From IMG/VR virus record IMGVR_UViG_3300027668_000008, positions 1 to 64,000 of that record: a DNA stretch of 64,000 bases; one strand, 5' to 3'. A model generated the notes under the pieces. That model was given only the letters and a program-made list of their open reading frames with translations, ran no database searches and was not told where the DNA came from. This document shows positions 1-48,096 of the stretch, in pieces (within the stretch, counting starts at the first letter, position 1; every line of letters starts with the position of its first letter). Position numbers and translations under genes: made by a program.

Positions 1-294
1 ATAGTATACATTGTACATTATAAGTAACATATTGAATTATATACAATACTATATAAACACAGTATGATATATGCAATACTATATAATCATATTGTACTCG
101 AAAGAGTGCATACTGTAGTAGTGACTACGTCTACTATAGTACAGGTTTAATACGTTACTAGTGTAGACATATCCATCACACGTTATATAACCCTAGAAGA
201 CTATAAGTTTATTTACTAGTATACTAGTAGCGGAACTAAAGGGTTGAAAAGGTGTTGCCAAAACCTAAAAAAGTTGACCAGCGATTTGATTGCG

Positions 295-360
295 CCAGGG
301 TAAGGAATCACGGTGGGGCCAAAACGTAGCCCCCTGGGCCTGAAATATAATTCTTTTTTT
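295..360 (+). other. GC-rich stem-loop followed by a T-tract (terminator-like or structured element)
   Basis: GGGGC(315-319)/GCCCC(329-333) stem with a 9-nt loop; outer CCAG(295-298)/CTGG(334-337); TTCTTTTTTT follows at about 351-360. Confidence 0.4.
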
Positions 361-454
361 ATTATTCTGAGTTTACTCTAATACTAGTATAGCATATAGC
401 ATAGATTCAATATTAGGGGTCTACAGTGTACATACACTGCTAGTACTAGTACTA

Positions 455-727
455 CTATGCATAGGGACTACCTACTATATCAATAGCCCACTGATCCCAA
501 GGCTCTGTTGTTGTAGCCTTCAAACAGTTAGTCTCTGTAGTAAGACCTGGTGCTAGTACATCATTCTCTAGTATACTAGTAATAGTATTGACTTCACTCT
601 CATCATCACTGTCTACCCATAGCACACCATGTGCCCATTCCATCTTAGGAGCACAACTCTGCAGGTTATCAGTAAAGTAATCTTGTATAGTAGTAATACT
701 CGTTTGCTCTATGTTATCATATGACAT
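455..727 (-). CDS. Small acidic hypothetical protein (early gene)
   Basis: 90-aa ORF with AAAGGAG RBS, directly downstream of a TTGACA/TATAAT promoter at 761-788. Confidence 0.75.
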   Translation of the reverse strand: MSYDNIEQTSITTIQDYFTDNLQSCAPKMEWAHGVLWVDSDDESEVNTITSILENDVLAPGLTTETNCLKATTTEPWDQWAIDIVGSPYA

Positions 728-760
728 ATGTATGCTCCTTTAAAGTTAACTTATACTATA

Positions 761-788
761 ATTATAACACAACTAGACGTACTGTCAA
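761..788 (-). promoter_or_regulatory. Sigma70-type early promoter
   Basis: Minus strand TTGACA-N16-TATAAT with TG extension, then TATAAGTTAA leader and AAAGGAG RBS. Confidence 0.8.
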
Positions 789-797
789 CCGGTTATT

Positions 798-953
798 TTA
801 TAATAAGTCGATTTCTAATTCAGATAAACACACAACTACGGCTTGACTAGGTGATGTTGTTACGTTATAACTAATGCAGGCATTACTGGCTTGATCGAAT
901 GTAGAGAAAAAGAGTGTAGTTTGTGTTGCGAAGTCGACGATTGCGTACTGCAT
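798..953 (-). CDS. 51-aa hypothetical protein (MQYAIVDFATQ...), not in the ORF track
   Basis: ATG at 953 with AGGAG RBS, TAA at 798-800; lies between two promoters. Confidence 0.6.
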   Translation of the reverse strand: MQYAIVDFATQTTLFFSTFDQASNACISYNVTTSPSQAVVVCLSELEIDLL

Positions 954-991
954 AGAGTATCTCCTGTTTGTTTAACTTAACTTATACTACT

Positions 992-1019
992 ATTATAGCA
1001 TATCTAGCCGGCTTGTCAA
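992..1019 (-). promoter_or_regulatory. Sigma70-type early promoter
   Basis: TTGACA-N16-TATAAT with TGC extension, then TATAAGTTAA leader and AGGAG. Confidence 0.8.
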
Positions 1020-1117
1020 CCTAAATAAATACATTTGTACACATTATTATGTGGATATTCAGTCATAGTTGTACGTTACTATTGGTTCAATAGTCCAGAA
1101 CTCCAGTTTACATATAC

Positions 1118-1187
1118 ATTATAACAGGTTTTCACCATGTTGTCAACCTAATTAAACGGTTGACAAACTGAATAAACAGTGTATAAT
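1118..1187. promoter_or_regulatory. Back-to-back divergent sigma70 promoters
   Basis: Minus: TTGACA(1141-1146)-N17-TATAAT(1118-1123). Plus: TTGACA(1160-1165)-N16-TATAAT(1182-1187), facing the first radical SAM gene. Confidence 0.75.
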
Positions 1188-1218
1188 ATAATATTAACCT
1201 CCTTATGAACAGGTAGTA

Positions 1219-2523
1219 ATGACGAAACCCAATAAGAAAAGCCCTACACACTGTATGTTACCATGGATTCATTCGCATACTAGTGCTAATGGAACCTTCA
1301 AACCATGTTGTAATGCCATGGGCAGTGATCAACCACTGTGGACCAGTGATGCAAATGATGAAAGCACGTGGTATAAACAGGATCCTAACGCTACTAATGT
1401 AGCAAGAGCCGGCGATAGTATGAGTATAAGACGTAACAACATGACATTAAGTGAGTGGTTCACTAGTGCTTACATGGATAAACTACGCAATGACCTTGCT
1501 AATGGTGTACAAAACCCTATGTGTGGAAGGTGTTGGAGAGATGAAACTCGTAGTGGTACTAGTATAAGACAAAGATATAACAGTAAGTATGAACATCATA
1601 CCACTGTTGAACCCTCAATCTCATACCTAGACCTCAAGTTAACCAACCAATGTAACCTCAAGTGTAGGATGTGTGGCCCAAGTGACAGTAATTTAATAGC
1701 ACAAGACATAGTAGAACTAGAATCCCGGGGGTTGACAGTGCCCGTTAACTATGCTAATGCCTTCGGCCCTAGGAGAAGAAGCCATGCAGATACCAATTAC
1801 ATCGGAGGTTTGCCGGCAAGTACACTAGAAGACATTGAACATCTACTACCACAGTTAACACAACTTAAAGTAACCGGTGGTGAACCAACGCTACAACCAG
1901 AAGTACTACGCTTGTTCGATAGATGTATAGACAACAAGTATGCAGAAAACATTGAACTACACGTTACTACCAATGCTACCAAGTTTACAACAAAGTTTCT
2001 TGAACGTATAGAGCAATTTAAGAACACAAGATTCAATATAAGCGTTGATGGTTATGGTACAACATACAATTACATACGCTATCCCTTTACATGGGACAAG
2101 TTTAATGCTCGTATACAGTTACTAGAAAGTAGATACACTAGTAGTACTACAATACATTGGGCCTATACTTGTGTACCACAGATGTTTAACATAGAGAACA
2201 TACATAAACTACAACAACGAGTAGGGTCAGAACATTTATATGTGAACAATGTGCTACACCCTGACGGTATATACAACAGTTTAGACATAGTACCTGAACA
2301 TATACTAGTATACGCACTAGAGAACATAGAGTATGTTGAAGGTCAAAGTGATATTTTAATTAATTATATTAAAACATTATTAAATGATTATAAGCCCGTG
2401 ACTAAGAGTAGACTAGCAGACATGGTAAAGAGTGTTACTAGTGTAGACATACTACGCAATCAGCACTACAGTGAGTGTTTAGACCCCTTAACAGTGAAGT
2501 TTATAACTGAATCAGCATTGTAG
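1219..2523 (+). CDS. Radical SAM enzyme with N-terminal twitch/SPASM-like domain (class A, #1)
   Basis: N-terminal CMLPW..PCC..CGRC; CNLKCRMC (CxxxCxxC); TGGEP; C-terminal DxxR. Confidence 0.9.
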   Translation: MTKPNKKSPTHCMLPWIHSHTSANGTFKPCCNAMGSDQPLWTSDANDESTWYKQDPNATNVARAGDSMSIRRNNMTLSEWFTSAYMDKLRNDLANGVQNPMCGRCWRDETRSGTSIRQRYNSKYEHHTTVEPSISYLDLKLTNQCNLKCRMCGPSDSNLIAQDIVELESRGLTVPVNYANAFGPRRRSHADTNYIGGLPASTLEDIEHLLPQLTQLKVTGGEPTLQPEVLRLFDRCIDNKYAENIELHVTTNATKFTTKFLERIEQFKNTRFNISVDGYGTTYNYIRYPFTWDKFNARIQLLESRYTSSTTIHWAYTCVPQMFNIENIHKLQQRVGSEHLYVNNVLHPDGIYNSLDIVPEHILVYALENIEYVEGQSDILINYIKTLLNDYKPVTKSRLADMVKSVTSVDILRNQHYSECLDPLTVKFITESAL

Positions 2524-2910
2524 ACGGTTGTAATGGACATACCTTGAGAAACGGAAGCGACAGAAAGGCATACCTCAGCGACTCGAACCGACCTATAAGA
2601 AAAATTCTACACCCTAGATTCACTAGCACTACTAGTGTAATTAAATGAATTTACTTGCTCTTTGGTTGTTTCTCTAGTATAATGAGTACTATAAGCAGTG
2701 CTAAATAGTAGTGCGTATACTAGTTCTATAGTGTGTGCTTTCCCCATGCAAACTTTAACTACTATACAACTGTATACTATAATGTGAATTAAATCATTTA
2801 TTATTTTTAGTTCTCTACTAGTGTAAAACAAACCTGTACTAGTGTAGAACAGAGTAAATAACAATACTATTAGAGTAACAATGCTAACTATCAATTACAA
2901 GAGAACATAG

Positions 2911-4509
2911 ATGTCAAAACTGGACAACCCATACGATAAAACACAATTTACTACTAATCCACTAGAACCTTTAAGTGTACTATCATTAAAAGAACGCAAA
3001 GCAAACAAATGGTTTGATGCTGAAGGCAACACTATGTTTCAATATGAACGTGTTAAACGTTTAGAATTGGAATTCAATAATACTTGTTTCTTATACTGTG
3101 GAGGTTGTGGACGTACATTTAATCCAGAACTAGAGAAAGCAGGTAAGAAACTAATCATGCTTAAAGACGTTAAAAAGTTCTTCCCACCCGAATTTTGTGC
3201 TCAACTGCATTATTTTTTAAGTTGCGGTAACTATGGTGATCCAACAGCACATCCAGAGACACTAGACATACTACGTTGGTTTAGAACAAATGGAACAAAG
3301 AACGTAAGCATAAGTTCAAACGGAGCAAGTCGTAGTCCTGAATGGTGGGCTGAACTGGCTGGCATCATCAATGGAGAAGGTGGAAGCCGTGATGATATTA
3401 AAAACTATTACGGCGGTAGAGTTACCTTTAGCATTGACGGACTAGCAGACACCAACCATTTATACCGTGTGGGTGCAAAATGGGATAGGATAGTGGAAAA
3501 TGTTACTGCGTTTATTAATGCAGGAGGCAGAGCTAGATGGCAATGGATTATGATGAACCATAATGAACACCAATTAGAAGAAGCAAAAGCATGGGCTAAA
3601 GAAATAGGCTTTAGTGAGTTTATAGAAAAGGTTAGTTTTAGATATAACCCCATACGTTTAAGCAAACGTGAAGCAGAGAAACTAGCAGAAGACCAAGAGT
3701 TTGAAATGCTTAAAGACCGTAGTTTAAAGCAGGAGGAACTGCGAAAAGACGTTAGTATGAAATTTGAGCTTACCGACGCTAATGCGGCACTGAGTGCCCG
3801 AGCCGCCAAGCAAGGTGGCACCGAATTGAGCCCAGTTAATGTAAGTGTTAATCCAGAGAATCAACATCCTTATAGAGAAAAGATTAAAGGCATACACGAA
3901 CGTACAAGCAAGACTGCTAAAAAGTTTTGGAGCACTAAACAAAACATTATATGTCAAAACATAGGTGATCCAAGGATATATGTTGATGCAACAGGTAAAG
4001 TATGGCCCTGCAATTGGTTAGGTGGAATAGAGTTTTATGAAAATAAGGACAAGCATTGGCCTCTACCAAGTTATAAGAAGTATGGTATAGATGATCAATG
4101 GAACAGTTTATATAACTTTGCAGACGACGATAATCCAGTTAGAAGCATACTAGAACATCCTTTTTATGAGTATTTGTTAGAAGAAGATTGGAAACATAGT
4201 AGTGAAATGCAACCTGCTAAATGTAAACAAATGTGTCATACAGAGCTAGGTGATGGTATATTTGAAAGTATGAGACGTAATGAACAGAATTTAAAAACTG
4301 GTGAGTATAAAGACATCAGCGAAATACATGATACAGGTATTACTAAAGATGGTGGTCAAGTTGTTATGGCTCCAGAAGGTCAAAAGACTGGACGCTTTAA
4401 ACATCAAGGCGGAACAGGTATTGGTCCTGGCAGTAACAAGGCTGTAGAAGGATTAGATCAAAGCATACTAGATATTGAAACAATAGATGAAGACACCAAC
4501 GAATCATAA
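2911..4509 (+). CDS. Radical SAM enzyme with C-terminal SPASM/twitch domain (class B, #2), with an insertion and a Gly-rich tail
   Basis: CFLYCGGC; GNYGDP in place of GGEP; C-terminal C..VWPC..CKQMC. Confidence 0.9.
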   Translation: MSKLDNPYDKTQFTTNPLEPLSVLSLKERKANKWFDAEGNTMFQYERVKRLELEFNNTCFLYCGGCGRTFNPELEKAGKKLIMLKDVKKFFPPEFCAQLHYFLSCGNYGDPTAHPETLDILRWFRTNGTKNVSISSNGASRSPEWWAELAGIINGEGGSRDDIKNYYGGRVTFSIDGLADTNHLYRVGAKWDRIVENVTAFINAGGRARWQWIMMNHNEHQLEEAKAWAKEIGFSEFIEKVSFRYNPIRLSKREAEKLAEDQEFEMLKDRSLKQEELRKDVSMKFELTDANAALSARAAKQGGTELSPVNVSVNPENQHPYREKIKGIHERTSKTAKKFWSTKQNIICQNIGDPRIYVDATGKVWPCNWLGGIEFYENKDKHWPLPSYKKYGIDDQWNSLYNFADDDNPVRSILEHPFYEYLLEEDWKHSSEMQPAKCKQMCHTELGDGIFESMRRNEQNLKTGEYKDISEIHDTGITKDGGQVVMAPEGQKTGRFKHQGGTGIGPGSNKAVEGLDQSILDIETIDEDTNES

Positions 4510-5797
4510 ACAATTAAAAGGCTTTTGTGTACTGCCTTTTATTCATTTAAGCACACGCACTGATGGTAGTATGCAGATATGCTGTCATGCTAACAGTAGT
4601 AGTACGGAAGATAATAGAAAACCCGGCGTTAATCGTAAAGATGATGGTAGTTTAGTTAATCTAAAGCAGGATAGAGCTGAAGACTATTGGAATACAGAGT
4701 TTATGCGTACTATACGCACAGATATGTTGGCAAATAAGATGCCAAGAGCTTGTTTAACTTGTTATAAAGAAGAAGGATTAGGCTATCGCAGTAAACGTGT
4801 ATGGGAAAACGAAGAGTGGGAAAGGCGTATTGATGTGCCTGCATTATTAAAAGGTGTTGACAATAGTGGAGCAATGAGTTATGGTATACACTATGTTGAT
4901 ATGAAGTTAGGTAATAAATGTGACCTTGCTTGTGTTATGTGCAACCCTGCTGATAGTACACAATGGATACCTGACTATAATAAATTAATTAGCAGTGCTA
5001 GTGATGAATTAAATAAAGAAGTTTATTGGAATAAATCAGAAGCAGGTGGATATAATTGGTGGAAAAATAATAAAACATATTGGACTGACATATATGAGCA
5101 GTTGCATAACCTAAGACATATTTATATTATTGGTGGTGAGCCAACTATTAATAAAGAATTTAAACAGTTCTTACAGTATTGCGTAGATAATAATTATGCA
5201 AAAGGTATTGAATTAAGATTTAATACTAATGGACAAACAATAGATCCTGAATTAAAACAATTATACACAAAATTTAAACATTGTTTAATTCATTTAAGCA
5301 TGGACGGTATATACGAACGTTATGAATATATTCGTTATCCTGGTACATGGGCTAAAGAATTAGAAGTATTAAAGTATTGGGACAATATGCCTGACAACGT
5401 AACAGTTGACATCGACTGTACAGTTAGTGCATTAAACGTTAGCCATATACCAGACTTTGTACGTTGGAAGATGGATCAAGGCTTTAAAAAATTAAATAAA
5501 ACAAGATTCGGTGGCACTATAGGAATGCATTTACTATGGACACCTAACTTCTTAGGCATTAATAATTTAAATGATGAAATAAAAGCCAAAGCAAGTAACG
5601 ATATAGCACAACTACGCATGGAACTTGGCACAACAGTTACAAATAGATATAAAAAATTTGATGCACTATTAAATGCACTAGATAAACCAGCAACAAATAT
5701 AACAGTCTTAGTTGAGTACTTGGACAAAATGGATAAGATAAGAGGAACTTCATGGCAGGATACATTTCCAGAACTAATCAGTTTGCGAAAGAGCTAA
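4487..5797 (+). CDS. Radical SAM enzyme, N-terminal twitch (class A, #3)
   Basis: FCVLPF..ICC..CLTC; CDLACVMC; IGGEP; DKIR. Confidence 0.9.
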   Translation: MKTPTNHKQLKGFCVLPFIHLSTRTDGSMQICCHANSSSTEDNRKPGVNRKDDGSLVNLKQDRAEDYWNTEFMRTIRTDMLANKMPRACLTCYKEEGLGYRSKRVWENEEWERRIDVPALLKGVDNSGAMSYGIHYVDMKLGNKCDLACVMCNPADSTQWIPDYNKLISSASDELNKEVYWNKSEAGGYNWWKNNKTYWTDIYEQLHNLRHIYIIGGEPTINKEFKQFLQYCVDNNYAKGIELRFNTNGQTIDPELKQLYTKFKHCLIHLSMDGIYERYEYIRYPGTWAKELEVLKYWDNMPDNVTVDIDCTVSALNVSHIPDFVRWKMDQGFKKLNKTRFGGTIGMHLLWTPNFLGINNLNDEIKAKASNDIAQLRMELGTTVTNRYKKFDALLNALDKPATNITVLVEYLDKMDKIRGTSWQDTFPELISLRKS

Positions 5798-6726
5798 TAG
5801 AAAAAGAATTAATTAGCCACAAAAAGCACAACGCAATATACGATTACTTTTTTCAAACAACATTAAGGGACGCACCGTGGTATGATTGGTTAGACCAACC
5901 CGGATACTTTGAAGTTGCGGATGAATATAAAGAACGTATGACTGAATGGATTGTTGATAATGATTTTAATACTGTACATGGATTAGATAACTTTAAGCAT
6001 CGCGATTTAATTAATGGAACTACACAAGCATTTGATGAAGCATATTATAGATACAGTGGCAGACGTTTAAGAATATTGCGTGGCGAGTATGCGTATCACA
6101 AACGTGTTGTGTCTGATTATGTTTATTTAGACGAAGTATATTCAGAAGATTTAAGCATGAGCCAATTAGATGGTGATAACCCAATAAAAGAAAACGATTG
6201 GGTAATAATTAGTTTCCCATTTTGTGGAACAGGCGGAACTCCATTAGGATATCATGCAATATTAAATGATTGTTTGTTAAAAAAGGTTCCTGTATTAATA
6301 GATTGTGCTTGGTATGGAACTTGTATGGATCAACATATTGATTTAACACACCCTGCTATCAGTGAAGTAAGTTTTAGTTTAACTAAAAGCACAGGTACAG
6401 GCAACATTAGAAGTGGTGTGCGTTACAGTAATTACGAAGATAACTTACCAATTAGACAACAAAACAATTATAATCATTTAGTATTGGGAGCGGCACAAGT
6501 AGGTATTCATGTAATGAAACATATACCTAGTGACTGGCAAGTAAAGAATTACAGAGATTTTCAAATACAACTATGTCGTAAGTTAAACATTATGCCTAGT
6601 CCATGTATGCATATCGCAATAGCAGATGGTGAAGAAGATTGGCACAAGGACTTCTTAATGGACCAACGACATTACAAAGTTGGCATTAGACAGGCACTTA
6701 AGGCAATGAAGAAGGAACAACTTTAA
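5752..6726 (+). CDS. PLP-dependent fold-type-I enzyme (aminotransferase-like)
   Basis: NGTTQAF phosphate loop, LIDCAW (PLP-binding Asp), FSLTK (Schiff-base Lys). Confidence 0.7.
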   Translation: MAGYISRTNQFAKELIEKELISHKKHNAIYDYFFQTTLRDAPWYDWLDQPGYFEVADEYKERMTEWIVDNDFNTVHGLDNFKHRDLINGTTQAFDEAYYRYSGRRLRILRGEYAYHKRVVSDYVYLDEVYSEDLSMSQLDGDNPIKENDWVIISFPFCGTGGTPLGYHAILNDCLLKKVPVLIDCAWYGTCMDQHIDLTHPAISEVSFSLTKSTGTGNIRSGVRYSNYEDNLPIRQQNNYNHLVLGAAQVGIHVMKHIPSDWQVKNYRDFQIQLCRKLNIMPSPCMHIAIADGEEDWHKDFLMDQRHYKVGIRQALKAMKKEQL

Positions 6727-6986
6727 TGAGTATGATTTCTCCATGTATCAGCATATGTAGATGGGATCCAGTAACCAGTAACTGTTACGGATGTGGTCGT
6801 ACTGTTGCAGAGAAAATGATATGGAAAGACCAGGATACCACAGACGAGTGGAAAGAAAACAATTTAAAAGAGTGCATGGAAAGATTATCAGGGTGGCAAT
6901 TAGAAAGTTTCAAGGAATCATATCAGCATAAGATTAAATACGGTATATCCTTGTTTAAAAAAGAAATGAAGAAGAAACAACTTTAA
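6726..6986 (+). CDS. DUF1289-like small putative Fe-S protein
   Basis: SPCISIC..CYGCGRT..E..W signature. Confidence 0.8.
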   Translation: MSMISPCISICRWDPVTSNCYGCGRTVAEKMIWKDQDTTDEWKENNLKECMERLSGWQLESFKESYQHKIKYGISLFKKEMKKKQL

Positions 6987-7702
6987 TGAGTAACACACCT
7001 AATCCTGTAATTCGAATTATTGGCGATAGTTTTTTTACTAAAACTAAACGTAATTGGCTAGACCGTGCTATAGATCCAACACAGTTTACAATACATAACA
7101 GTGCTAAAGGTGGTACTGGCTTTTGGAGACAGTTAGATCAAGTAAAAGATTTAAAGAACCAAGACTATTATAATAATATTAAATATTGTATAGTAGGGTG
7201 GAGTCATCCATTTAGAATGTATGCTCCAGAGTATATGAGAGACTGGCGTATGAACGATCCAGCACTTTGTGATGAGGAGTTCTTTGGAGTCAAACACGAT
7301 CCTGGACTTAAAGCAAAGCAAGGTACAGTTTCTAATATGATTAAGTATGATTTAATAAATGAAGGTAGAGAATGTACTAAAGCATACGACTTATTACAGT
7401 ATGTTGATGCAGTATTATATCCTAGTATGCCACATATTAAATTCATTAACTTCTTTTGCTTTGACTTTGATTATATAGATGTAACATTAAATGACTTTAA
7501 CTTTAAAAACGCTGTTACAATACATCCAACATTATTTGATATTTGTACTGCTGATGAAAAGGATCCTGATAAAAAGGTAACTCCTATGGACGTTAATAAT
7601 CATTTAAATCATATACAACATAAAGGCATGGCATTAATGTTGGCAAATATAATACGTGATACAGAACAATTCAAACGAGTGAATATTAATAAATGGCTTT
7701 AG
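6986..7702 (+). CDS. SGNH/GDSL hydrolase-like protein
   Basis: IIGDSF block I, AKGG block II, C-terminal DVNNH. Confidence 0.6.
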   Translation: MSNTPNPVIRIIGDSFFTKTKRNWLDRAIDPTQFTIHNSAKGGTGFWRQLDQVKDLKNQDYYNNIKYCIVGWSHPFRMYAPEYMRDWRMNDPALCDEEFFGVKHDPGLKAKQGTVSNMIKYDLINEGRECTKAYDLLQYVDAVLYPSMPHIKFINFFCFDFDYIDVTLNDFNFKNAVTIHPTLFDICTADEKDPDKKVTPMDVNNHLNHIQHKGMALMLANIIRDTEQFKRVNINKWL

Positions 7703-8766
7703 ACATAGATAAAATTAACTACATGATGATAGAGTTTACATCGGCTTGTAATGCCAGATGTCCTGCTTGTGCAAGAACACAGCACTTTGTTAACAGTGGA
7801 ATAACTCCTCATGGTAGTAGACAAATAACAATGGACCATATGAAGAATCTTTTTGGTATCAAATGGCCCAATTTAAGAAAACTTAATATTGATGGCAACT
7901 ATGGTGACAGTATGTATCACCCACACAGTTTAGAATTATTGGAATACATCGCTGACACACAAGATGCATCTAAGATTAAGTTATACATTGATTCCAATGG
8001 AGGCTACAAGAAGCCTGAGTTTTGGACAAAGTTGGGCGACTTAATGAAACGTTTTCATCCTACAAGTTGTATTACATTCGGCATCGATGGAATAGATCCA
8101 GAAATGCATGCCAGGTACAGAGTAAGAGTAGACTTAAACAAAGTATTTGAAAATGCTAAAGCGTTTATCGATAATGGTGGCAACGCTGAATGGAAATGGA
8201 TTGGCTTTGATTATAATGATCACCAATTGGAAGATGCTAAACGTATGAGTAAAGAAATGGGGTTCAGTGCGTTTATATATAAAAATACTAGAGTAAGACA
8301 TAGTATTATACGTGAAGCAATGGGTCTACAAGACTTAGACAAGGGTGTTAGTGCTACGAGTAAGAATGTTAACAGTACAATTAGTCAAGAGATAGTTGCA
8401 CAAGCAAAGAAAGAAATTAAAAGTGTTAAAGACTTTGCTAACGATAGTACAATACATTGTAGGTTCCGTAGGGAAAAGAACTATGGATTTCAAGTAGAAC
8501 ACAGTGGCAGAATATATCAATGCTGTCATTTACCTGGGTACTATAATTACCAACAACCTGGCACTGAGATTTATAAAGAATATGAATATTATACAAATAA
8601 ATACAACACTAACTGGAACAGTTTAGACGAACACGGAATAATGGATATATTAAATCACCAATACTTCCAGCACGACTTAACAGACAGTTTTAATAACAGA
8701 ACAGATGCAACTGAAAACCCTAGAATAAACAGATGTATTTCAAAATGCGGATCAATTGATGCTTAA
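7693..8766 (+). CDS. Radical SAM enzyme, C-terminal SPASM (class B, #4)
   Basis: CNARCPAC; GNYGDS; C..YQCC..CISKC. Confidence 0.9.
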   Translation: MALDIDKINYMMIEFTSACNARCPACARTQHFVNSGITPHGSRQITMDHMKNLFGIKWPNLRKLNIDGNYGDSMYHPHSLELLEYIADTQDASKIKLYIDSNGGYKKPEFWTKLGDLMKRFHPTSCITFGIDGIDPEMHARYRVRVDLNKVFENAKAFIDNGGNAEWKWIGFDYNDHQLEDAKRMSKEMGFSAFIYKNTRVRHSIIREAMGLQDLDKGVSATSKNVNSTISQEIVAQAKKEIKSVKDFANDSTIHCRFRREKNYGFQVEHSGRIYQCCHLPGYYNYQQPGTEIYKEYEYYTNKYNTNWNSLDEHGIMDILNHQYFQHDLTDSFNNRTDATENPRINRCISKCGSIDA

Positions 8767-10761: not shown

Positions 10762-11918
10762 TGAAAAATACAATTTGTTCAGCACCTTGGCAAGCAACAT
10801 ACTATAAAGAAAGTATGGGCAAATACAAAATGTGTTGTAGTTTTAAAAAATGGACTAAAGCAGAAAGTCCTGAAGATTATTACAACTCGCCAATGGTAGA
10901 ATCTGTTAGGGAGAAAATGCTTAACGGAGAATGGCATGAAGGTTGTACACTTTGTCACAAATTAGAAAACGCGGGTCTTGAAAGTGATAGAGAAACATTT
11001 AATAAACATTTAGAAGTTGACAAATTAGATACAAGTAAGTTTGAACTTAAATGGTTAGATTATAGACCAGGAAACTTATGTAACTTAAAATGTAGAATGT
11101 GTCATTCTAGTAACAGTAGTTTAATCGATAAAGAAACAAAAAAACATCCTGAATTGAAAAAATTTATGGAGACAATACCTGAATACGAATCGGAATTATT
11201 ACCAAGTATTTGCAATGATGAAACCTTTAGAGATTTAGAAGTATTAAAAATATTAGGCGGTGAACCAACTATTGATCCACAAGTACAAAAATTACTAGAG
11301 TGGACAATTAGTAATGGATACGCAAAGAATATTAATTTGCGTTACACAACAAATGCAACAAACATAAATGAAAATTGGATTAAAGCAGTTAAACAATTTA
11401 AAACAACAAAGATTCAATTAAGTTTAGATGGCACAGGCAAAACATACGACTATATTAGAACAGGCGCCAATTGGCATAAAATTAAAGAAAATATTATGTT
11501 AATGCCTAAAAAGATTAATAACATTAGAAACATTGGTTCTAATATTGTGTTTAGTGTCTATGACTGTTTTACTATTGATCAGTGGTATCCAGAGTTGTTA
11601 GAAATAAAAGAAACTATGCAACGAGAATATGGTATAGACATTAACTTTAATATTATTGATTGTACTTGGCCCACTTATCAAATGGTATCTAATTTACCTG
11701 AGGAATACAAACAAATTGTAGTAGACAAAATCGATAGTATGCCAATGGATAAAGTTTTAAAAGCAGTTAGACATCACACTACTAAAAAAGCAAAAGGCAT
11801 ACCAGAAAAAGAAGTTGCTATGTTCTTTGAACATAACGATATGCTAGATAGAATTAGAAAAACAAATATCAATGATATAAGCGAACACTATGAAACACTT
11901 CGACAGAACACATTATAA
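10761..11918 (+). CDS. Radical SAM enzyme, N-terminal twitch (class A, #6)
   Basis: ICSAPW..MCC..CTLC; CNLKCRMC; LGGEP; DRIR. Confidence 0.9.
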   Translation: MKNTICSAPWQATYYKESMGKYKMCCSFKKWTKAESPEDYYNSPMVESVREKMLNGEWHEGCTLCHKLENAGLESDRETFNKHLEVDKLDTSKFELKWLDYRPGNLCNLKCRMCHSSNSSLIDKETKKHPELKKFMETIPEYESELLPSICNDETFRDLEVLKILGGEPTIDPQVQKLLEWTISNGYAKNINLRYTTNATNINENWIKAVKQFKTTKIQLSLDGTGKTYDYIRTGANWHKIKENIMLMPKKINNIRNIGSNIVFSVYDCFTIDQWYPELLEIKETMQREYGIDINFNIIDCTWPTYQMVSNLPEEYKQIVVDKIDSMPMDKVLKAVRHHTTKKAKGIPEKEVAMFFEHNDMLDRIRKTNINDISEHYETLRQNTL

Positions 11919-33967: not shown

Positions 33968-34813
33968 TTATATTGTAAACAATTTTGTTGTATCTGTCAA
34001 GTATAAAAGTACCTTTTGACCAAAGTTTCTGTGTCCATGCTTGTCAAATTGATTAACTTTTAGTATACTAGCCGTTCCATTTTCTTTAATTTTTGAAAAA
34101 TGCATTCGGTTTGTATTCTTAGTAGTAGATTTAAGTGTTTCATTTCTAGTTAGTGCATAATCTATAACTGCAACTGCGTCATTATCTTTTAAATTTGCAA
34201 ACATTATGTTAGTTAATGGGAATTTTACCCAATCATCTTCTGCAGAATTCTTATCACCAAGTATTGCTGTCTTTAGTCTGTCTATTTCAACAGACATAAT
34301 CACAAATCTGTTATTATAGTCAGCCATTTCCTCTACAAACTCAGAGAATTTTTTTATTTTTGCCACTGCATTAGCATTATCATTGGACTTGCTAAGGTTT
34401 AGTTTATCTAAACTAGACTTAATCTTTGATGCGTGTCCTTTGTATACATTATTTAAATGCTTTTCAAGTTCGTGTTGCTCTTGTGGATTATAAGATAATA
34501 AATCTATCTTACCTTTTGAAGTAGGTAAGTTGATAATAAAGTAATTGATTTGGTCTTCGTCGTCTACATCTTTATAATTGTTTATAGTTTCAATGGCGGC
34601 ATCAATAGTTCCTCCTACACTGAAATCATGGTCAACTACATAGTAGACATAACCGTCAATCTTGTTTGCTATCTCATCTACCCAAGAGTTATACATTGCA
34701 TTAGGATCTATGCTAAACTTCTTTTTGGCCCAGCGATCATCTGCATAAAATTCTTTTGCCTTTGCAACTGGTAAGTTCCAGTTGTCTCCGATTACATATA
34801 TTCTGTTATTCAT
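33968..34813 (-). CDS. Hypothetical protein, degenerate SGNH-like fold
   Basis: YVIGDNW at the block I position, lacking the catalytic Ser. Confidence 0.5.
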   Translation of the reverse strand: MNNRIYVIGDNWNLPVAKAKEFYADDRWAKKKFSIDPNAMYNSWVDEIANKIDGYVYYVVDHDFSVGGTIDAAIETINNYKDVDDEDQINYFIINLPTSKGKIDLLSYNPQEQHELEKHLNNVYKGHASKIKSSLDKLNLSKSNDNANAVAKIKKFSEFVEEMADYNNRFVIMSVEIDRLKTAILGDKNSAEDDWVKFPLTNIMFANLKDNDAVAVIDYALTRNETLKSTTKNTNRMHFSKIKENGTASILKVNQFDKHGHRNFGQKVLLYLTDTTKLFTI

Positions 34814-41051: not shown

Positions 41052-43965
41052 TTTGTACTCCTAAGTTTGTGTCAGCAAATCCACCTGTTCTTTGTTCAAC
41101 ATATGCTTTGAAGTCTACTGTATCTATATTATACTTGTAATATGCAGTAAAGTCAAGGTTTCTTTCGTCTGTTTTCATATTAACTTTAGTTTCTGTATTG
41201 TTTACGTTACCATCCATATCTCTACTAGTAGGTACATTATACGTCATACTAGCAGTTTCAATAGTAACTGGCTGACTTACACTTGCACCCCAACCATTCT
41301 TTTCAACACCAGCACTCCATGTACTACTGTAAATATCGCCTGCTTTACTTAACATACTCCATTCATTACTGTAAGAATTTTTAGTGTAACCTAAACCAAA
41401 CTGTCCAAATACCTTAACATCATTATAAGATGCATTGTAATTGAAGTTGGCATAAGTTGTGTATGCATTATCTAAATTACCAAACACACCTGATTGACTG
41501 TTTCCTAAAAACGAATTTGCTTCGTTAAAGAATCCAGGTTGTATTGTCCACTGATGATCTGGATTATCATTTAATGCAATGTGCGGTAATGCCAAGTGTT
41601 GGTCATAATTACTATACCCTGCATACATATTTGTTGCCGCCAATGTGTGTGTAAATTTATTTGCTCTTGTATCTACTTTATATGAAGTACTCATGTCTAC
41701 ATAAAAATCTCTTTCATAACTATCTAATACCATTACACTAGCAAGTTCTGACATAGCACCACTGCTACCTGAAACATATCCTGACAGTGAACTTACACTA
41801 CCATTTGTTCTACCAGTGGTAGGAATACCTGTTACTCCAACTGGTTGTGTTGCTTTATCTAAATCTAACAATCCTTGTCCGTGTGTGTTTACATTATAGT
41901 TTGCAATAGTTTTATCAGCAGTTTCTGTAAGAAGTCTTACAAGGTTCTTGCCTTTCATGTGAGGCCACATTTGATTAACAATAGCAACTGCACCTGTTAC
42001 TACCGGAGCCGCCATACTAGTACCTGACATATGTACATACCCTGTACCATTATTATCTGTACTGTACACACTCGTACCCGGTGCAAGTATATAGTAATCA
42101 CTTATACTTGCGGCATCTGTACAAGCATCATTAACATAAGTTGTACATACCGTGCCTGCTTTGTTACTAAATCCTGATATCTGATTGTTAGCAATATCCC
42201 AACTACCTACTACAAGCATTTGCCCATCTAGTATTAAGTTACCATTGCTATCAGTTGCAGTAGCCATTTGGTTCATACCTGGACTATATTCATACCCTTG
42301 GTTACCTGCGGCTTTAACTAATACCATGTCATCACCTAATGCAGTTTTCCAACCTGTTGCTTCGTCTTTTGCACCATTGTAACCATTTACACCATAATAC
42401 CAATGTGTACTATGCCATTGTCCGTTACCATCTAATGTAAGACTTCTTTTAAATCCGTTATCTAATCTAACTTCGGCACTAACATTAATTGCTATTGCTC
42501 CGTTATCCTTGCCCCACTGTGCGGCTTTTTTGGCCCTGTAAAAACTATATGCAGTATTGTCTGTTACTTTTGCAATCATCATAGTAACATCTGGTGCTAC
42601 ACCAATTATTCCGTTACCATCAAGTTCTGCACCTGTAATACCTGCAACGTGTGTACCGTGTCCGTTACTGTCCGAAACATCTGTACTATTGTCTAAGAAG
42701 TTTTTAGTAAGTCCAATGTTACCATCTAAGTCTGTGTGGTTTACGTTAGCACCACTGTCTGCAATAACTACAATACTTCCTTTACCTGTCCAACCTCTGC
42801 TCCATGCCGCATCTGCATTAATAGTAGACAGCACGTTATCGTTAACAAAGTCTGCAAGTCCAAAGAACTCGTCTGTTCTATATAAGTTATTATCTTTAAT
42901 AGCACCAGGAGTTACTGTACCCAAGTCGCTATGTGTATATACAACATTTGCATATGAAACTGATGTGTTGTTTTCTTCTTCAACAACTTCTTCTTCAACA
43001 ACTTCTTCTTCTACAGGAGCATCACCATTCTTAATGTACTCGTAAGTTATAACAGGACTTGCTGGAACAATGTGCGTAGAAGTTTCAACAACTGTAATAG
43101 CCTTAACACTATTGTCACTATACGTTATGTTGTATGTTACATTCCACGTCTTAATTAGGTTTTCGTTCATGTTTGTTTGAACTCTATACTTGTCGCAAGT
43201 TCCTGTATGAGTTGTGCCATCTTGTAATATTTGATTAGTGCAATCTACTGTAGCATTAAATGATTTACTAACATCACCTGCTACTGTTGACTCTACTACT
43301 TGGCTTTGTAATTCTTTTGCAACTTGTTCTCTAGAAACTTCAGTTACTTCAACTACTGGTTCCTCTACAATAGGCTCTTCTACAATAGGCTCTTCTACAA
43401 TAGGCTCTTCTACAATAGGCTCTTCAACTACTGGTTCTTCTACGACAGGGGCAATAATATCTTTAACATCTTCAACTTCAATCTCACCTGTACCAACCTT
43501 TTCAAAGTCAATCTTATCTTCATTTTGTGCAAAGGCTTTTACATCTAAATATGCACCAGTTTCATCATCAAATGTTCCGCTATCAGCAACACCTTTCCAA
43601 AAGGTTTCTTTACCATCATAATAAACTTTCTTGTAACCTTTAAGTTTATTCCATGCTTGGTCAAGTGGAGTTGCAACACCATCGATTTCAACTGTATAAT
43701 TTTTTAATACGGATTCATCAATACTATTATTGTTCATCCATTCAAATACTTCTACTGCCTCCTGGGCAGTTACTTTACCATCTTCGGTAACAGTTTGTAT
43801 TACTGCAAGATTTCCTATACTATTGGAAATTAATGAATTAAAAGAAACAGTTCCAATATTAGTTGGAGTTGGTGCAGTGATACTAATACTTCCACCTCCA
43901 CCACCGCCACAAGCGGTAAGAGCCAACATACTAACCATTCCTAACACTGCTGTCTTTTTATTCAT
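41035..43965 (-). CDS. Subtilisin-like S8 serine protease lipoprotein with acidic repeats and a beta-rich C-terminal domain
   Basis: Lipobox LTAC plus Gly run; catalytic triad ADSG / HGTHVAG / GTSMAAP; oxyanion AAGN; terminal F residue; RBS-supported ATG at 43965. Confidence 0.9.
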   Translation of the reverse strand: MNKKTAVLGMVSMLALTACGGGGGGSISITAPTPTNIGTVSFNSLISNSIGNLAVIQTVTEDGKVTAQEAVEVFEWMNNNSIDESVLKNYTVEIDGVATPLDQAWNKLKGYKKVYYDGKETFWKGVADSGTFDDETGAYLDVKAFAQNEDKIDFEKVGTGEIEVEDVKDIIAPVVEEPVVEEPIVEEPIVEEPIVEEPIVEEPVVEVTEVSREQVAKELQSQVVESTVAGDVSKSFNATVDCTNQILQDGTTHTGTCDKYRVQTNMNENLIKTWNVTYNITYSDNSVKAITVVETSTHIVPASPVITYEYIKNGDAPVEEEVVEEEVVEEENNTSVSYANVVYTHSDLGTVTPGAIKDNNLYRTDEFFGLADFVNDNVLSTINADAAWSRGWTGKGSIVVIADSGANVNHTDLDGNIGLTKNFLDNSTDVSDSNGHGTHVAGITGAELDGNGIIGVAPDVTMMIAKVTDNTAYSFYRAKKAAQWGKDNGAIAINVSAEVRLDNGFKRSLTLDGNGQWHSTHWYYGVNGYNGAKDEATGWKTALGDDMVLVKAAGNQGYEYSPGMNQMATATDSNGNLILDGQMLVVGSWDIANNQISGFSNKAGTVCTTYVNDACTDAASISDYYILAPGTSVYSTDNNGTGYVHMSGTSMAAPVVTGAVAIVNQMWPHMKGKNLVRLLTETADKTIANYNVNTHGQGLLDLDKATQPVGVTGIPTTGRTNGSVSSLSGYVSGSSGAMSELASVMVLDSYERDFYVDMSTSYKVDTRANKFTHTLAATNMYAGYSNYDQHLALPHIALNDNPDHQWTIQPGFFNEANSFLGNSQSGVFGNLDNAYTTYANFNYNASYNDVKVFGQFGLGYTKNSYSNEWSMLSKAGDIYSSTWSAGVEKNGWGASVSQPVTIETASMTYNVPTSRDMDGNVNNTETKVNMKTDERNLDFTAYYKYNIDTVDFKAYVEQRTGGFADTNLGVQIAYKF
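43350..43450 (-). repeat. 15-bp tandem repeat encoding (EEP[IV]V)n inside the subtilase
   Basis: TCTTCTACAATAGGC-type units, about 6 copies; a related EEEVV repeat lies near 42975-43010. Confidence 0.9.
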
Positions 43966-47823: not shown

Positions 47824-47892
47824 TTAATTCCCCTAGTTATACACGGCGAGTCGTGTTTATTATTATAGTATACTACATTATTATAGTATAAG

Positions 47893-48096
47893 TCAACCAA
47901 AATATTTGTTCAACATTTCAAGTCTGTCGTCAGCGGTAGCCATTTTATCTAATTCTTTTTGAACAGTTTCGATAATATCACTATGTTCACCGATGCCTAC
48001 CACAGATTGCATATATACTTCAATATTGGCTTTATGCAAATCTACTTCTGCTTCGGCGTGTTTCTTAGCCGCATTAATTATTATTTGTTTCAACAT
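47893..48096 (-). CDS. Small hypothetical protein
   Basis: H.ANIEVY....VGIGEHSDI. Confidence 0.65.
   Translation of the reverse strand: MLKQIIINAAKKHAEAEVDLHKANIEVYMQSVVGIGEHSDIIETVQKELDKMATADDRLEMLNKYFG

What the first reader, a model, noticed from the sequence alone, without database searches (positions are those of the whole stretch)
1..2910. ACTAGT-palindrome-saturated zone that penetrates a coding gene: candidate origin or genome-end signal
Seen: 15 ACTAGT sites between 157 and 2843 (157, 215, 223, 383, 445, 575, 1279, 1462, 1558, 2137, 2304, 2437, 2631, 2719, 2817/2838 region), plus several AGTACT, GTATAC and TGTACA palindromes. A rough expectation at about 34% GC is one per 3 kb, which is about what the remaining 61 kb shows. 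Six sites sit inside rSAM #1, whose Leu/Ser codons are pulled toward CTA/AGT, and CTAG density seems to fade through gene 2911-4509. The zone also holds the divergent promoters and the two longest non-coding stretches. Inference: an array of protein-binding sites (replication initiation, packaging or nucleoid anchoring), or a local mutational signature at a genome end. Ordinary codon bias would not explain it.
Basis: partly seen in the sequence, partly recalled or inferred. Interest (0 to 1): 0.72.

Follow-up and report, generated by a model that had tools for sequence, protein, structure and literature searches.

The report
Palindromic ACTAGT site array in phage
A 3-kb stretch of an uncultured 307-kb marine phage genome is packed with a 12-letter palindrome built on ACTAGT, which most likely serves as a set of docking sites for a DNA-binding protein around the phage's early promoters, and it is not a genome end.

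Summary
There are 16 ACTAGT sites in 1-2910, against 1.7 expected from the rest of the 306.7-kb genome, and this is the top window genome-wide. The real unit is longer, about TAYACTAGTRTA. 14 of 17 zone sites carry the extension, against 0.6-3.9 expected even from the zone's own composition. The zone (about -250 to +2900 across the contig junction) is a hypervariable early-gene island inside an array of radical-SAM genes. It holds four perfect sigma-70 promoters, a conserved small acidic ORF and a 95-nt ultraconserved element.

The "genome end" is an assembly artefact: other contigs read straight through, and the 160-bp overlap differs only at a strain polymorphism. GC skew turns at about 20 and 249 kb, not here. 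At least six related lineages keep the same motif class in the same island, but at different positions.

Unrelated phages carry compact arrays of 7-12 ACTAGT in 78-193 bp, just upstream of terminase or primase genes. In bacteria the double site TACTAGTATACTAGTA sits at promoters of GntR/FadR-type regulator genes.

Best reading: an operator-like or iteron-like array of protein-binding sites. The protein that binds it is unidentified, and the phage encodes no GntR.

The parts
1..2910 (.). ACTAGT-saturated, TpA-rich compositional island. It continues about 250 bp upstream across the contig junction, to genome position about 306305.
   Evidence: 16 ACTAGT against 1.67 expected. rho(TA) is 1.44 and 1.28 in its two 1-kb windows, the two highest in the genome (mean 0.94, sd 0.084). 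The boundaries are sharp.
213..230 (.). Paired site ACTAGT-AT-ACTAGT, with core TAGTATACTA at 217-226. It fits the GntR/FadR-type operator form.
   Evidence: It fits the consensus NyGTM-N0-1-KACNy (PMC4494728). It forms a 15-nt perfect inverted repeat with 568-582.
565..582 (.). Second paired site (TCTAGT-AT-ACTAGT, core TAGTATACTA at 569-578), inside the acidic ORF.
225..338 (.). Ultraconserved GC-rich non-coding element. It is nearly invariant in 4+ lineages whose flanking DNA cannot be aligned.
   Evidence: Alignments. 19 metagenome contigs carry its 22-nt core. No Rfam match. It folds no better than shuffled sequence. Absent from 185k prokaryote genomes. RNA-library contigs cover 175-325.
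455..727 (-). Conserved small acidic ORF (90 aa), driven by the sigma-70 promoters to its right.
   Evidence: Orthologues of 83 aa in L083, L084 and L085 share 34 invariant residues. No Pfam, PHROG or Atlas match. RNA-library contigs cover 415-749.
761..1187 (.). Cluster of four perfect (12/12) sigma-70 promoters: 788-761 (-), 1019-992 (-), 1146-1118 (-) and 1160-1187 (+). It holds no ACTAGT.
   Evidence: Two of them lie in 51-nt repeated promoter cassettes 231 bp apart. Strains L105 and L108 lack one unit.
798..953 (-). 51-aa ORF between the two promoter cassettes. It is absent from strains L105 and L108.
1219..2523 (+). Radical-SAM gene #1, with six ACTAGT sites and codon usage shifted to NTA codons.
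   Evidence: Pfam PF04055. Only 1 of the 6 sites is shared with any orthologue, and 4 of the 6 involve amino-acid changes at variable positions.
2524..2910 (.). Non-conserved spacer with four ACTAGTRTA-type sites (2631, 2719, 2817, 2838) and a promoter-like site at 2755-2783 (+) ahead of rSAM #2.
   Evidence: The ORF at 2607-2894 (-) is doubtful: it has a TTG start and no family match.
152..169 (+). 18-nt patch identical to 2432-2449 inside rSAM #1, evidence of short-patch copying between sites.
   Evidence: The orthologous codons differ at 9 of the 18 positions.
1..160 (.). Stretch repeated at the end of the contig (306555-306714) apart from a 4-nt patch at 31-34. This is an assembly overlap, not a terminal repeat.
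   Evidence: The ATTG/TCCA patch is a polymorphism between runs X1 and X2.

Best explanation
The zone is a hypervariable early-gene island of a GAP32/Rak2/PA5oct-group marine jumbo phage. A short palindromic cis-element has accumulated in it: core ACTAGT, consensus TAYACTAGTRTA, and paired form TACTAGT-AT-ACTAGTA.

I read the copies as a redundant array of recognition sites for a dimeric, sequence-specific DNA-binding protein. The sites lie in the transcribed DNA on both sides of four consensus sigma-70 promoters and are absent from the promoters themselves. The most likely job is therefore control of the divergent early transcription unit, by roadblock, looping or silencing, or by capture of a host regulator.

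Shown:
- the motif, its specificity to the island, and its persistence as a class with turnover of individual copies;
- its spread into a coding gene at the cost of amino-acid changes;
- its reuse as compact arrays in unrelated phages;
- the paired form as a promoter palindrome of bacterial GntR/FCD regulator genes.

Inferred:
- that a protein binds here at all;
- that this protein is host-encoded, since no GntR, TrpR, ParB or DNA methylase was found in the phage;
- that the effect is on transcription.
For: 1. Enrichment is about 9-fold. The extended consensus is present in 14 of 17 zone sites against 14 of 170 elsewhere, beyond any Markov model of the zone up to order 4.
2. Six or more lineages with unalignable island DNA keep ACTAGT at 0.9-4.4 per kb, against 0.5-0.7 per kb in their flanks. 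They keep the same flanks: 12 of 25 sites extended against 3 of 30 (p 0.002), and Y..R flanks 1.88 of 2 against 1.13 of 2.
3. Density is highest in non-coding spacers (10-11 per kb), lower in coding DNA (3.7-4.6 per kb), and zero in the 491-bp promoter cluster.
4. In rSAM #1 the sites arise at protein-permissive positions. 5 of 6 Thr-Ser pairs are ACT-AGT, against 20% genome-wide (p 0.0016), and Thr-Ser pairs are 2.7 times more frequent than average.
5. Unrelated phage records have arrays of 7-12 ACTAGT in 78-193 bp with the same TACTAGTA flanks. They lie directly upstream of o71+TerL+portal (G001), of primase-helicase (G005) and of primase (G003).
6. In 17 of 120 prokaryote loci holding TACTAGTATACTAGTA, a GntR-type gene starts within 182 bp. 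Only 3 of 1899 distant ORFs are of this type (odds ratio 20.7, p 3e-9). 7 of 8 checked are GntR+FCD. Three are SAR11-like marine single-cell genomes. The core GTATAC fits the FadR-subfamily consensus (PMC4494728).
7. Two other early promoters of this genome (116624 and 178817) carry TACTAGTA over the -10/+1 region.
Against: - No binding protein is identified, and the phage encodes no GntR.
- Individual sites are not conserved above neutral expectation between strains of 95-97% identity. 12 of 16 are kept, equal to the expectation, and 8 of 108 core bases changed against a 4.5% background.
- Copy number varies fivefold among lineages.
- Only two sites have the full paired form. Spacings in the compact arrays vary from 6 to 28 bp, which does not suit a rigid dimer on paired sites.
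- There is no helical phasing and no orientation bias.
- Three pairs of sites share 15-18 nt identical patches, which points to copying rather than independent selection.
- The host is unknown.
Confidence: 0.45

Rival explanations
1. The sites are a non-adaptive short-repeat family. The island is a recombination-prone hyperplastic region. Short-patch gene conversion, template switching and microhomology-mediated indels copy an ACTAGTRTA word around, so the density is a by-product of the island's turnover and has no function.
For: - 18-nt, 16-nt and 15-nt identical patches link pairs of sites, one of them between non-coding DNA and rSAM #1 codons.
- Indels between G000 and L105 begin or end at ACTAGTGT copies, and L105 has three extra copies in inserted DNA.
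- Per-site retention is at the neutral level.
- Copy number varies fivefold among lineages.
- A 231-bp indel lies between repeated promoter cassettes, as described for PeSL-mediated shuffling (PMC2839356, PMC4122927).
Against: - The same 8-12 bp consensus persists in lineages whose island DNA is otherwise unalignable.
- The same word forms tight arrays at operon heads in unrelated phages.
- Most rSAM #1 sites arose by point changes under protein constraint, not by copying.
- No known mechanism spreads an 8-12 bp palindrome by itself.
Confidence: 0.22
2. The zone is a replication origin or a packaging/terminal-repeat region. The ACTAGT copies would be iterons or terminase recognition boxes, and the contig ends reflect physical ends.
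For: - Compact ACTAGT arrays in other phages lie just upstream of primase or primase-helicase genes, and of TerL.
- The 100 bp at 1-100 is the third least stable window of the genome and holds two 22-nt direct repeats.
- Strong promoters read towards it.
- k-mer depth is 1.9x over -529..2145 in run X1.
- Two long contigs end within 300 bp of each other.
- The relative PA5oct has long terminal repeats (PMC7318152).
Against: - Skew extremes are at about 249 and 20 kb.
- The unstable stretch is not conserved in relatives.
- TerL lies at 195 kb, and no replication gene adjoins the zone.
- The depth excess is only 1.25x and 1.05x in run X2, and its right edge differs between runs.
- Contig breaks are explained by a strain bubble at 31-34 and by a very widespread conserved gene (phrog_11543) just upstream.
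- Contigs L001 and L081 read through.
Confidence: 0.15
3. The zone is a compositional island of foreign origin. The 3-kb block came from a donor with a TpA-rich, ACTAGT-rich signature and has not yet drifted to the composition of the rest of the genome.
For: rho(TA) is 1.19 in the island against 0.94 elsewhere, AA/TT is depleted, GC skew is about 0 against +0.2 in neighbouring genes, and the borders are sharp.
Against: - The same signature sits at the same place in all lineages, and they share only 52-68% protein identity in rSAM #1, so it is old and maintained.
- None of 79 loci with rSAM homologues has rho(TA) above 1.04.
- The nearest non-orthologous homologues have 0-0.19 ACTAGT per kb.
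- Composition explains only 3.5-5.6 of the 17 sites.
Confidence: 0.05
4. The sites are targets of a restriction-modification or orphan methylase system, like the GATC clusters at oriC or in the P1 pac site.
For: ACTAGT is a type II palindrome. P1 pac is an array of Dam-site hexamers (from my own knowledge).
Against: PF01555, PF00145 and PF02086 found nothing in the genome. The rest of the genome neither avoids nor favours the site once codon usage is allowed for: 92 of 190 sites are Thr-Ser codon pairs. The consensus extends beyond the hexamer.
Confidence: 0.04

Closest known systems
GntR/FadR-subfamily (FCD) operators
   Same: The paired site ACTAGT-AT-ACTAGT has the core GTATAC, which fits NyGTM-N0-1-KACNy. 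The exact 16-mer lies at the promoters of GntR+FCD genes in diverse bacteria, including SAR11-like marine cells (PMC4494728).
   Different: Only two of 17 zone sites are paired. The phage has no GntR gene. There are 17 sites over 3 kb where a bacterial promoter has one or two. Binding was not tested.
Iteron or pac-box arrays of phages and plasmids (lambda ori iterons; P1 pac hexamer repeats, from my own knowledge)
   Same: Many copies of a short word. The array penetrates a coding gene, as lambda ori does in gene O. Analogous compact ACTAGT arrays lie next to primase and terminase genes in other phages.
   Different: Here the copies are spread over 3 kb with irregular spacing and are not adjacent to replication or packaging genes. 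There is no skew or terminus signal.
Hyperplastic regions with PeSL promoter cassettes in T4-type phages (PMC2839356, PMC4122927)
   Same: Small early ORFs, repeated sigma-70 promoter cassettes, indels between cassettes, and strong variability between close relatives.
   Different: PeSLs are 50-70 bp promoter/terminator composites. The ACTAGT palindrome is a separate, shorter element that avoids the promoters. PeSL regions are not reported to have a distinct dinucleotide signature.
Stoperators of cluster A mycobacteriophages (from my own knowledge)
   Same: Many repressor sites lie in transcribed DNA, including genes, and act on elongation.
   Different: Stoperators are asymmetric 13-mers, oriented with transcription and spread genome-wide. 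These sites are palindromic and confined to 3 kb.
Trp repressor operator (from my own knowledge)
   Same: It has ACTAGT half-sites 8 bp apart. The site at 213-230 matches the 18-bp trp operator consensus at 14 positions.
   Different: No Trp_repressor domain was found in the phage. The host is unknown, and the central dinucleotide is swapped.

Membership tests
Replication origin | Inflection of cumulative GC skew or switch of gene strand at the site | tested here: not met
   The minimum is at about 249 kb and the maximum at about 20 kb. The zone lies inside the + strand block.
Replication origin | Conserved DNA-unwinding element next to initiator sites | tested here: not met
   Positions 1-100 form the third least stable 100-bp window in G000. 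The equivalent stretch ranks only at 3-17% in L083, L084 and L085.
Replication origin | Adjacent initiator, primase or helicase gene | tested here: not met
   The neighbours are radical-SAM genes and small ORFs. The feature is met in the unrelated phages G003 and G005.
Genome terminus / direct terminal repeat / pac site | Physical DNA ends or a twofold depth step at fixed borders | tested here: inconclusive
   Only assembled contigs of public runs were available. Depth is 1.9x in X1 but 1.25x and 1.05x in X2, with different right edges. Contigs L001 and L081 read through the junction.
Genome terminus / direct terminal repeat / pac site | Proximity to terminase genes | tested here: not met
   TerL lies at 195415-196041.
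GntR/FadR-subfamily operator | Palindrome fitting NyGTM-N0-1-KACNy | tested here: met
   TAGTATACTA at 217-226 and 569-578. The consensus is taken from PMC4494728. The other 13 sites carry only one half.
GntR/FadR-subfamily operator | A cognate GntR regulator present | tested here: not met
   PF00392 is absent from G000, G001 and G003-G005. A host regulator cannot be checked because the host is unknown.
GntR/FadR-subfamily operator | Protein binding to the site | not testable with these tools
   This needs EMSA or DAP-seq.
PeSL-type hyperplastic region | Repeated early-promoter cassettes flanking indels between close relatives | tested here: met
   51-nt cassettes lie 231 bp apart, and one unit is missing in L105 and L108. 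About 15 similar cassettes occur genome-wide.
PeSL-type hyperplastic region | Stem-loop terminator joined to the promoter | tested here: inconclusive
   Only one terminator-like site was found in the island, no more than in shuffles. A conserved terminator-like element lies at -421..-367.
Methylase target cluster | DNA methyltransferase encoded by the phage | tested here: not met
   PF01555, PF00145 and PF02086 gave no match. Other methylase families were not searched.
Stop-codon recoding (TAG as sense) | Longer ORFs appear under TAG=Q; a suppressor tRNA is present | tested here: not met
   No new long ORFs appear, and TAA and TGA interrupt all frames. There is no CUA-anticodon tRNA among the 8 tRNAs.

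The most novel reading that the evidence does not exclude
ACTAGT (TACTAGTA) is a cis-element shared across phage families and read by a host factor, for example a FadR-type GntR regulator of SAR11-like or other marine hosts. Small phages place compact arrays of it at the heads of their replication and packaging operons. This jumbo phage has spread it through an early-gene island strongly enough to rewrite codons and amino acids of a radical-SAM gene. The arrays would couple phage gene expression or replication to a host metabolic signal, or would titrate the regulator.
Probability: 0.15. Interest if true: 0.8.

Novelty: new variant of a known kind. Interest (0 to 1): 0.55.

Why it matters
If the array is a set of protein-binding sites, three things follow.
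- It marks a control region of an abundant, uncultured marine jumbo phage. The region was found in 14 DNA runs and 6 RNA runs.
- It shows DNA-level selection strong enough to alter a protein sequence.
- The same word recurs as compact arrays next to primase and terminase genes in unrelated phages, and as a GntR/FCD promoter palindrome in bacteria. This gives a concrete, testable candidate for a host factor that several phage families may exploit, and perhaps a sequence-based clue to host identity.

It also serves as a caution. Contig ends in metagenomic phage assemblies can coincide with striking sequence features simply because strain variation and widely shared genes break the assembly graph at those places.

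Tried and rejected
- **Close cultured relative:** blastn of 1-6000 against 50,697 phage records found nothing.
- **Rfam and tRNA scans of the zone:** nothing.
- **The 95-nt element as a structured RNA:** z-scores -0.65 to +1.08, and one compensatory pair at most.
- **TAG recoding:** rejected.
- **Saturation with promoter-like sites:** 21 found against 19.1 in shuffles.
- **General palindrome enrichment:** explained by composition.
- **NtcA-type GTA-N8-TAC spacing:** no peak.
- **Helical phasing or orientation bias of the sites:** none (positions).
- **Duplex-stability minimum as an origin mark:** not conserved.
- **Low dipyrimidine content as UV avoidance:** the island is only the second lowest window, so the idea was not pursued.
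- **Phage-encoded methylases, TrpR, ParB, GntR:** none found.
- **The clade-specific 175-aa ORF upstream (phrog_11543) as the cognate factor:** rejected. Its homologues in other phages have 0-1 ACTAGT nearby. Its fold model was not searched further (mean pLDDT 72).
- **A protein shared by all array-bearing phages:** none found.
- **Phage sequence in the SAR11-like single-cell genomes:** not found with rSAM #2 as query.
- **Literature search for the motif:** returned only cloning primers.
- **Other ACTAGT peaks in the genome (97-101, 201-204 and 272-275 kb):** they lie inside large genes with random flanks.
Full report
**What the window is.** The window is the first 64 kb of a single 306,714-bp virus contig with 35.9% GC. 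Its large terminase resembles those of the GAP32, Rak2, fHe-Yen9-04, Atu_ph07 and Vibrio 2.275.O jumbo phages. It is common in marine metagenomes: 14 DNA runs hold 55-96% of the sampled words of 1-6000, and 6 RNA runs hold 8-15%. Genes lie on the + strand from about 249 kb round to 21 kb and on the - strand in between. GC and AT skew follow gene strand, and cumulative GC skew has its minimum at about 249 kb and its maximum at about 20 kb.

**The observation.** ACTAGT occurs 16 times in 1-2910. The rest of the genome has 0.56 sites per kb, so 1.67 are expected (p 3.5e-11). This is the best 3-kb window of the genome, and the next best has 8 sites. Related words are even more enriched: CTAGTA 27 against 3.1, and ACTA/TAGT 101 against 39. 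Zone sites share flanks that give TAYACTAGTRTA. Sites elsewhere have random flanks.
- Simulations trained on the zone itself expect 3.5 ACTAGT (order 1), 5.6 (order 2) and 10.7 (order 3), against 17 observed.
- They expect 0.6-3.9 extended sites, against 14 observed.
- Other palindromes (GTATAC, AGTACT, TGTACA) are accounted for by the zone's dinucleotides.
- Genome-wide, half of all ACTAGT are Thr-Ser codon pairs, because AGT and ACT are favoured codons. Even so, rSAM #1 has 5 of 6 Thr-Ser pairs as ACT-AGT (p 0.0016) and 2.7 times the usual frequency of Thr-Ser.

**Not a genome end, not a skew-defined origin.** The last 160 bp repeat the first 160 bp, except for four adjacent bases at 31-34. 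IMG/VR contigs L001 and L081 read through the junction with one copy. The ATTG/TCCA patch is a strain polymorphism between runs X1 and X2. The exact overlap after the patch is 126 nt, which I take to be what a k=127 assembler leaves on a circular graph with a bubble (inference). Contig fragmentation just upstream coincides with a 175-aa gene of a very large conserved family: phrog_11543, with more than 7,900 relatives at 60-86% identity. k-mer depth is 1.9x over -529..2145 in X1 but only 1.25x and 1.05x in X2, with different right edges. A short terminal repeat is therefore neither shown nor excluded by assembled contigs alone.

**Anatomy.** The compositional island runs from about -250 to +2900, and both edges are sharp. 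Base composition equals that of the genome, but rho(TA) is 1.19 against 0.94±0.05, AC/GT is raised, and AA/TT, GA/TC and GC are lowered. Its two 1-kb windows are the top two of the genome for rho(TA). The island lies in the middle of an array of radical-SAM paralogues, with three more upstream. From left to right it holds:
- a conserved terminator-like element at -421..-367;
- an AT-rich stretch with two 22-nt repeats;
- a 95-nt ultraconserved GC-rich element at 225-338;
- a conserved acidic 90-aa ORF on the - strand;
- four perfect sigma-70 promoters within 761-1187;
- rSAM #1;
- a 387-bp non-conserved spacer.

ACTAGT density is 10-11 per kb in the spacers, 3.7-4.6 per kb in coding DNA, and zero in the promoter cluster.

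**Relatives.** Contigs L083, L084 and L085 share 82-87% nucleotide identity in the flanks. In the island only patches align, and rSAM #1 drops to 70%. Nineteen metagenome contigs carrying the ultraconserved core add further lineages.
- Every lineage has the TpA-rich signature between the terminator and rSAM #2.
- Every lineage has ACTAGT above its flanks: 0.9-4.4 per kb against 0.5-0.7 per kb.
- The flank consensus is kept: 12 of 25 sites extended against 3 of 30, p 0.002.
- Positions are not conserved. Only 1 of the 6 sites in rSAM #1 is shared with any orthologue, and 4 of the 6 involve amino-acid replacements at variable positions.
- Between strains of 95-97% identity (L105, L108), 12 of 16 sites survive, which is the neutral expectation. 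Four new sites appear, three of them in inserted DNA, and the indels border ACTAGTGT copies.
- Three pairs of sites share 15-18 nt identical patches.
- A 231-bp indel lies between two copies of a promoter cassette that recurs about 15 times in the genome. This is the behaviour described for PeSL cassettes of T4-type phages (PMC2839356, PMC4122927).

**The same word elsewhere.** A scan of IMG/VR for ACTAGTATACTAGT gave 104 loci, and the result was bimodal. Most loci have 2-4 ACTAGT nearby, but eight have 10-13. These belong to phages unrelated to this one.
- In the complete 59.5-kb record G001, 12 sites in 128 bp lie about 200 bp upstream of a 71-aa ORF, TerL (phrog_38, 1.5e-105) and the portal gene. 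A second array of 6 sites lies at 42.2 kb.
- In G005, 7 sites in 78 bp lie just upstream of a Toprim+DnaB primase-helicase gene.
- In the independent record G003, 10 sites in 193 bp lie just upstream of a primase gene.
- The flanks are again TACTAGTA.

In 120 prokaryote loci holding TACTAGTATACTAGTA there are no arrays. In 17 of them, however, a GntR-type gene starts within 182 bp, against 3 of 1899 distant ORFs (p 3e-9). Seven of eight checked are GntR+FCD. Three are SAR11-like marine single-cell genomes of about 27.5% GC and 1.0-1.4 Mb, where the palindrome lies between the regulator gene and fatty-acid hydroxylase genes. The core GTATAC fits the FadR-subfamily consensus (PMC4494728). Two such full sites (217-226 and 569-578) bracket the ultraconserved element. 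No GntR, TrpR, ParB or methylase domain was found in the phage.

**Interpretation.** Four lines of evidence argue for a recognition element rather than composition or codon bias:
- the specificity of the extended consensus;
- its persistence as a class across lineages;
- its concentration in spacers around, but not in, the promoters;
- its independent use as tight arrays at operon heads in other phages.

Neutral-level turnover, variable copy number and copied patches show that individual copies are dispensable and that copying contributes. I therefore give 0.45 to a redundant protein-binding array acting on the early unit, 0.22 to a functionless repeat family, 0.15 to an origin or packaging role, and small weights to the remaining readings. 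The binding protein, and any effect on transcription, remain inferences.

Noticed in passing
window 225-338: A 95-nt GC-rich non-coding element is almost invariant in at least four lineages whose surrounding DNA cannot be aligned. It has no Rfam match, folds no better than shuffles, and is absent from 185k prokaryote genomes. RNA-library contigs cover it.
   Followed up: partly
window 455-727 (-): A conserved, very acidic 83-90 aa protein with an invariant C-terminal motif (NCLKAT.TEPWDQWA.DIV). It is expressed from perfect sigma-70 promoters and matches no known family. It could be an early anti-defence or DNA-mimic protein, but this was not tested.
   Followed up: partly
window 740-790 and 971-1021; about 15 further copies genome-wide (e.g. 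28862, 30872, 86351, 116280, 116624, 119129, 148148, 178817): A repeated early-promoter cassette: GGTTGACA-N17-TATAAT/TATACT, then the leader TAGTATAAGTTAAAC and an RBS. One 231-bp unit is missing in strains L105 and L108, which is PeSL-like behaviour.
   Followed up: partly
genome 301.9-305.05 kb and window 1219-8766: At least seven radical-SAM genes, several with an N-terminal SPASM-like Cys-rich region, form an array that spans the contig junction. A DUF1289 gene (6726-6986) is also present. The pathway is unknown.
   Followed up: no
genome 305590-306117 (L081 6126-6653): A 175-aa protein of phrog_11543 has more than 7,900 relatives at 60-86% identity in marine T4-like phage contigs and no known function. 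The AlphaFold model has mean pLDDT 72 and is mostly helical. The gene coincides with a k-mer depth spike and contig breaks.
   Followed up: partly
genome 306134-306188 (L081 6669-6723): A 45-55 nt terminator-like element (hairpin plus T-run) is conserved at 89-93% in all lineages and marks the left edge of the variable island.
   Followed up: partly
window 31-34: A four-base patch, ATTG or TCCA, is polymorphic between sequencing runs and is the only difference between the two copies of the 160-bp contig overlap.
   Followed up: yes
genome 108544-128617 and 150442-150775 (outside the window): ARAGORN calls eight tRNA genes, including a tRNA-Ser with anticodon ACT (AGT is the dominant Ser codon, at 50%), and a permuted tmRNA with tag ANNNYQPEMALAA.
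   Followed up: no
L142 5796-5928; G001 42181-42249; L190 4226-4418; L158 2480-2557; G004 11218-11356: Compact arrays of 6-12 ACTAGT within 64-193 bp occur in phages unrelated to this one. Those whose neighbours were checked lie directly upstream of terminase/portal genes or of primase(-helicase) genes.
   Followed up: partly
L290 370-385, L279 6914-6929, L295 919-934, and 14 other prokaryote loci: The 16-bp palindrome TACTAGTATACTAGTA lies within 182 bp of the start of GntR/FCD regulator genes in diverse bacteria. In the two SAR11-like cells examined (L290, L279) it lies between the regulator gene and fatty-acid hydroxylase genes.
   Followed up: partly
genome 99321-101639 (-), outside the window: The second-highest ACTAGT peak (5 sites in one 2.3-kb gene) has random flanks. 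It looks like a codon-pair effect rather than the island motif.
   Followed up: partly
window 34061-34070 and 47866-47875: Two further perfect TAGTATACTA cores. The one at 47866 overlaps the -10 element of a sigma-70-like promoter at 47896 (-).
   Followed up: no
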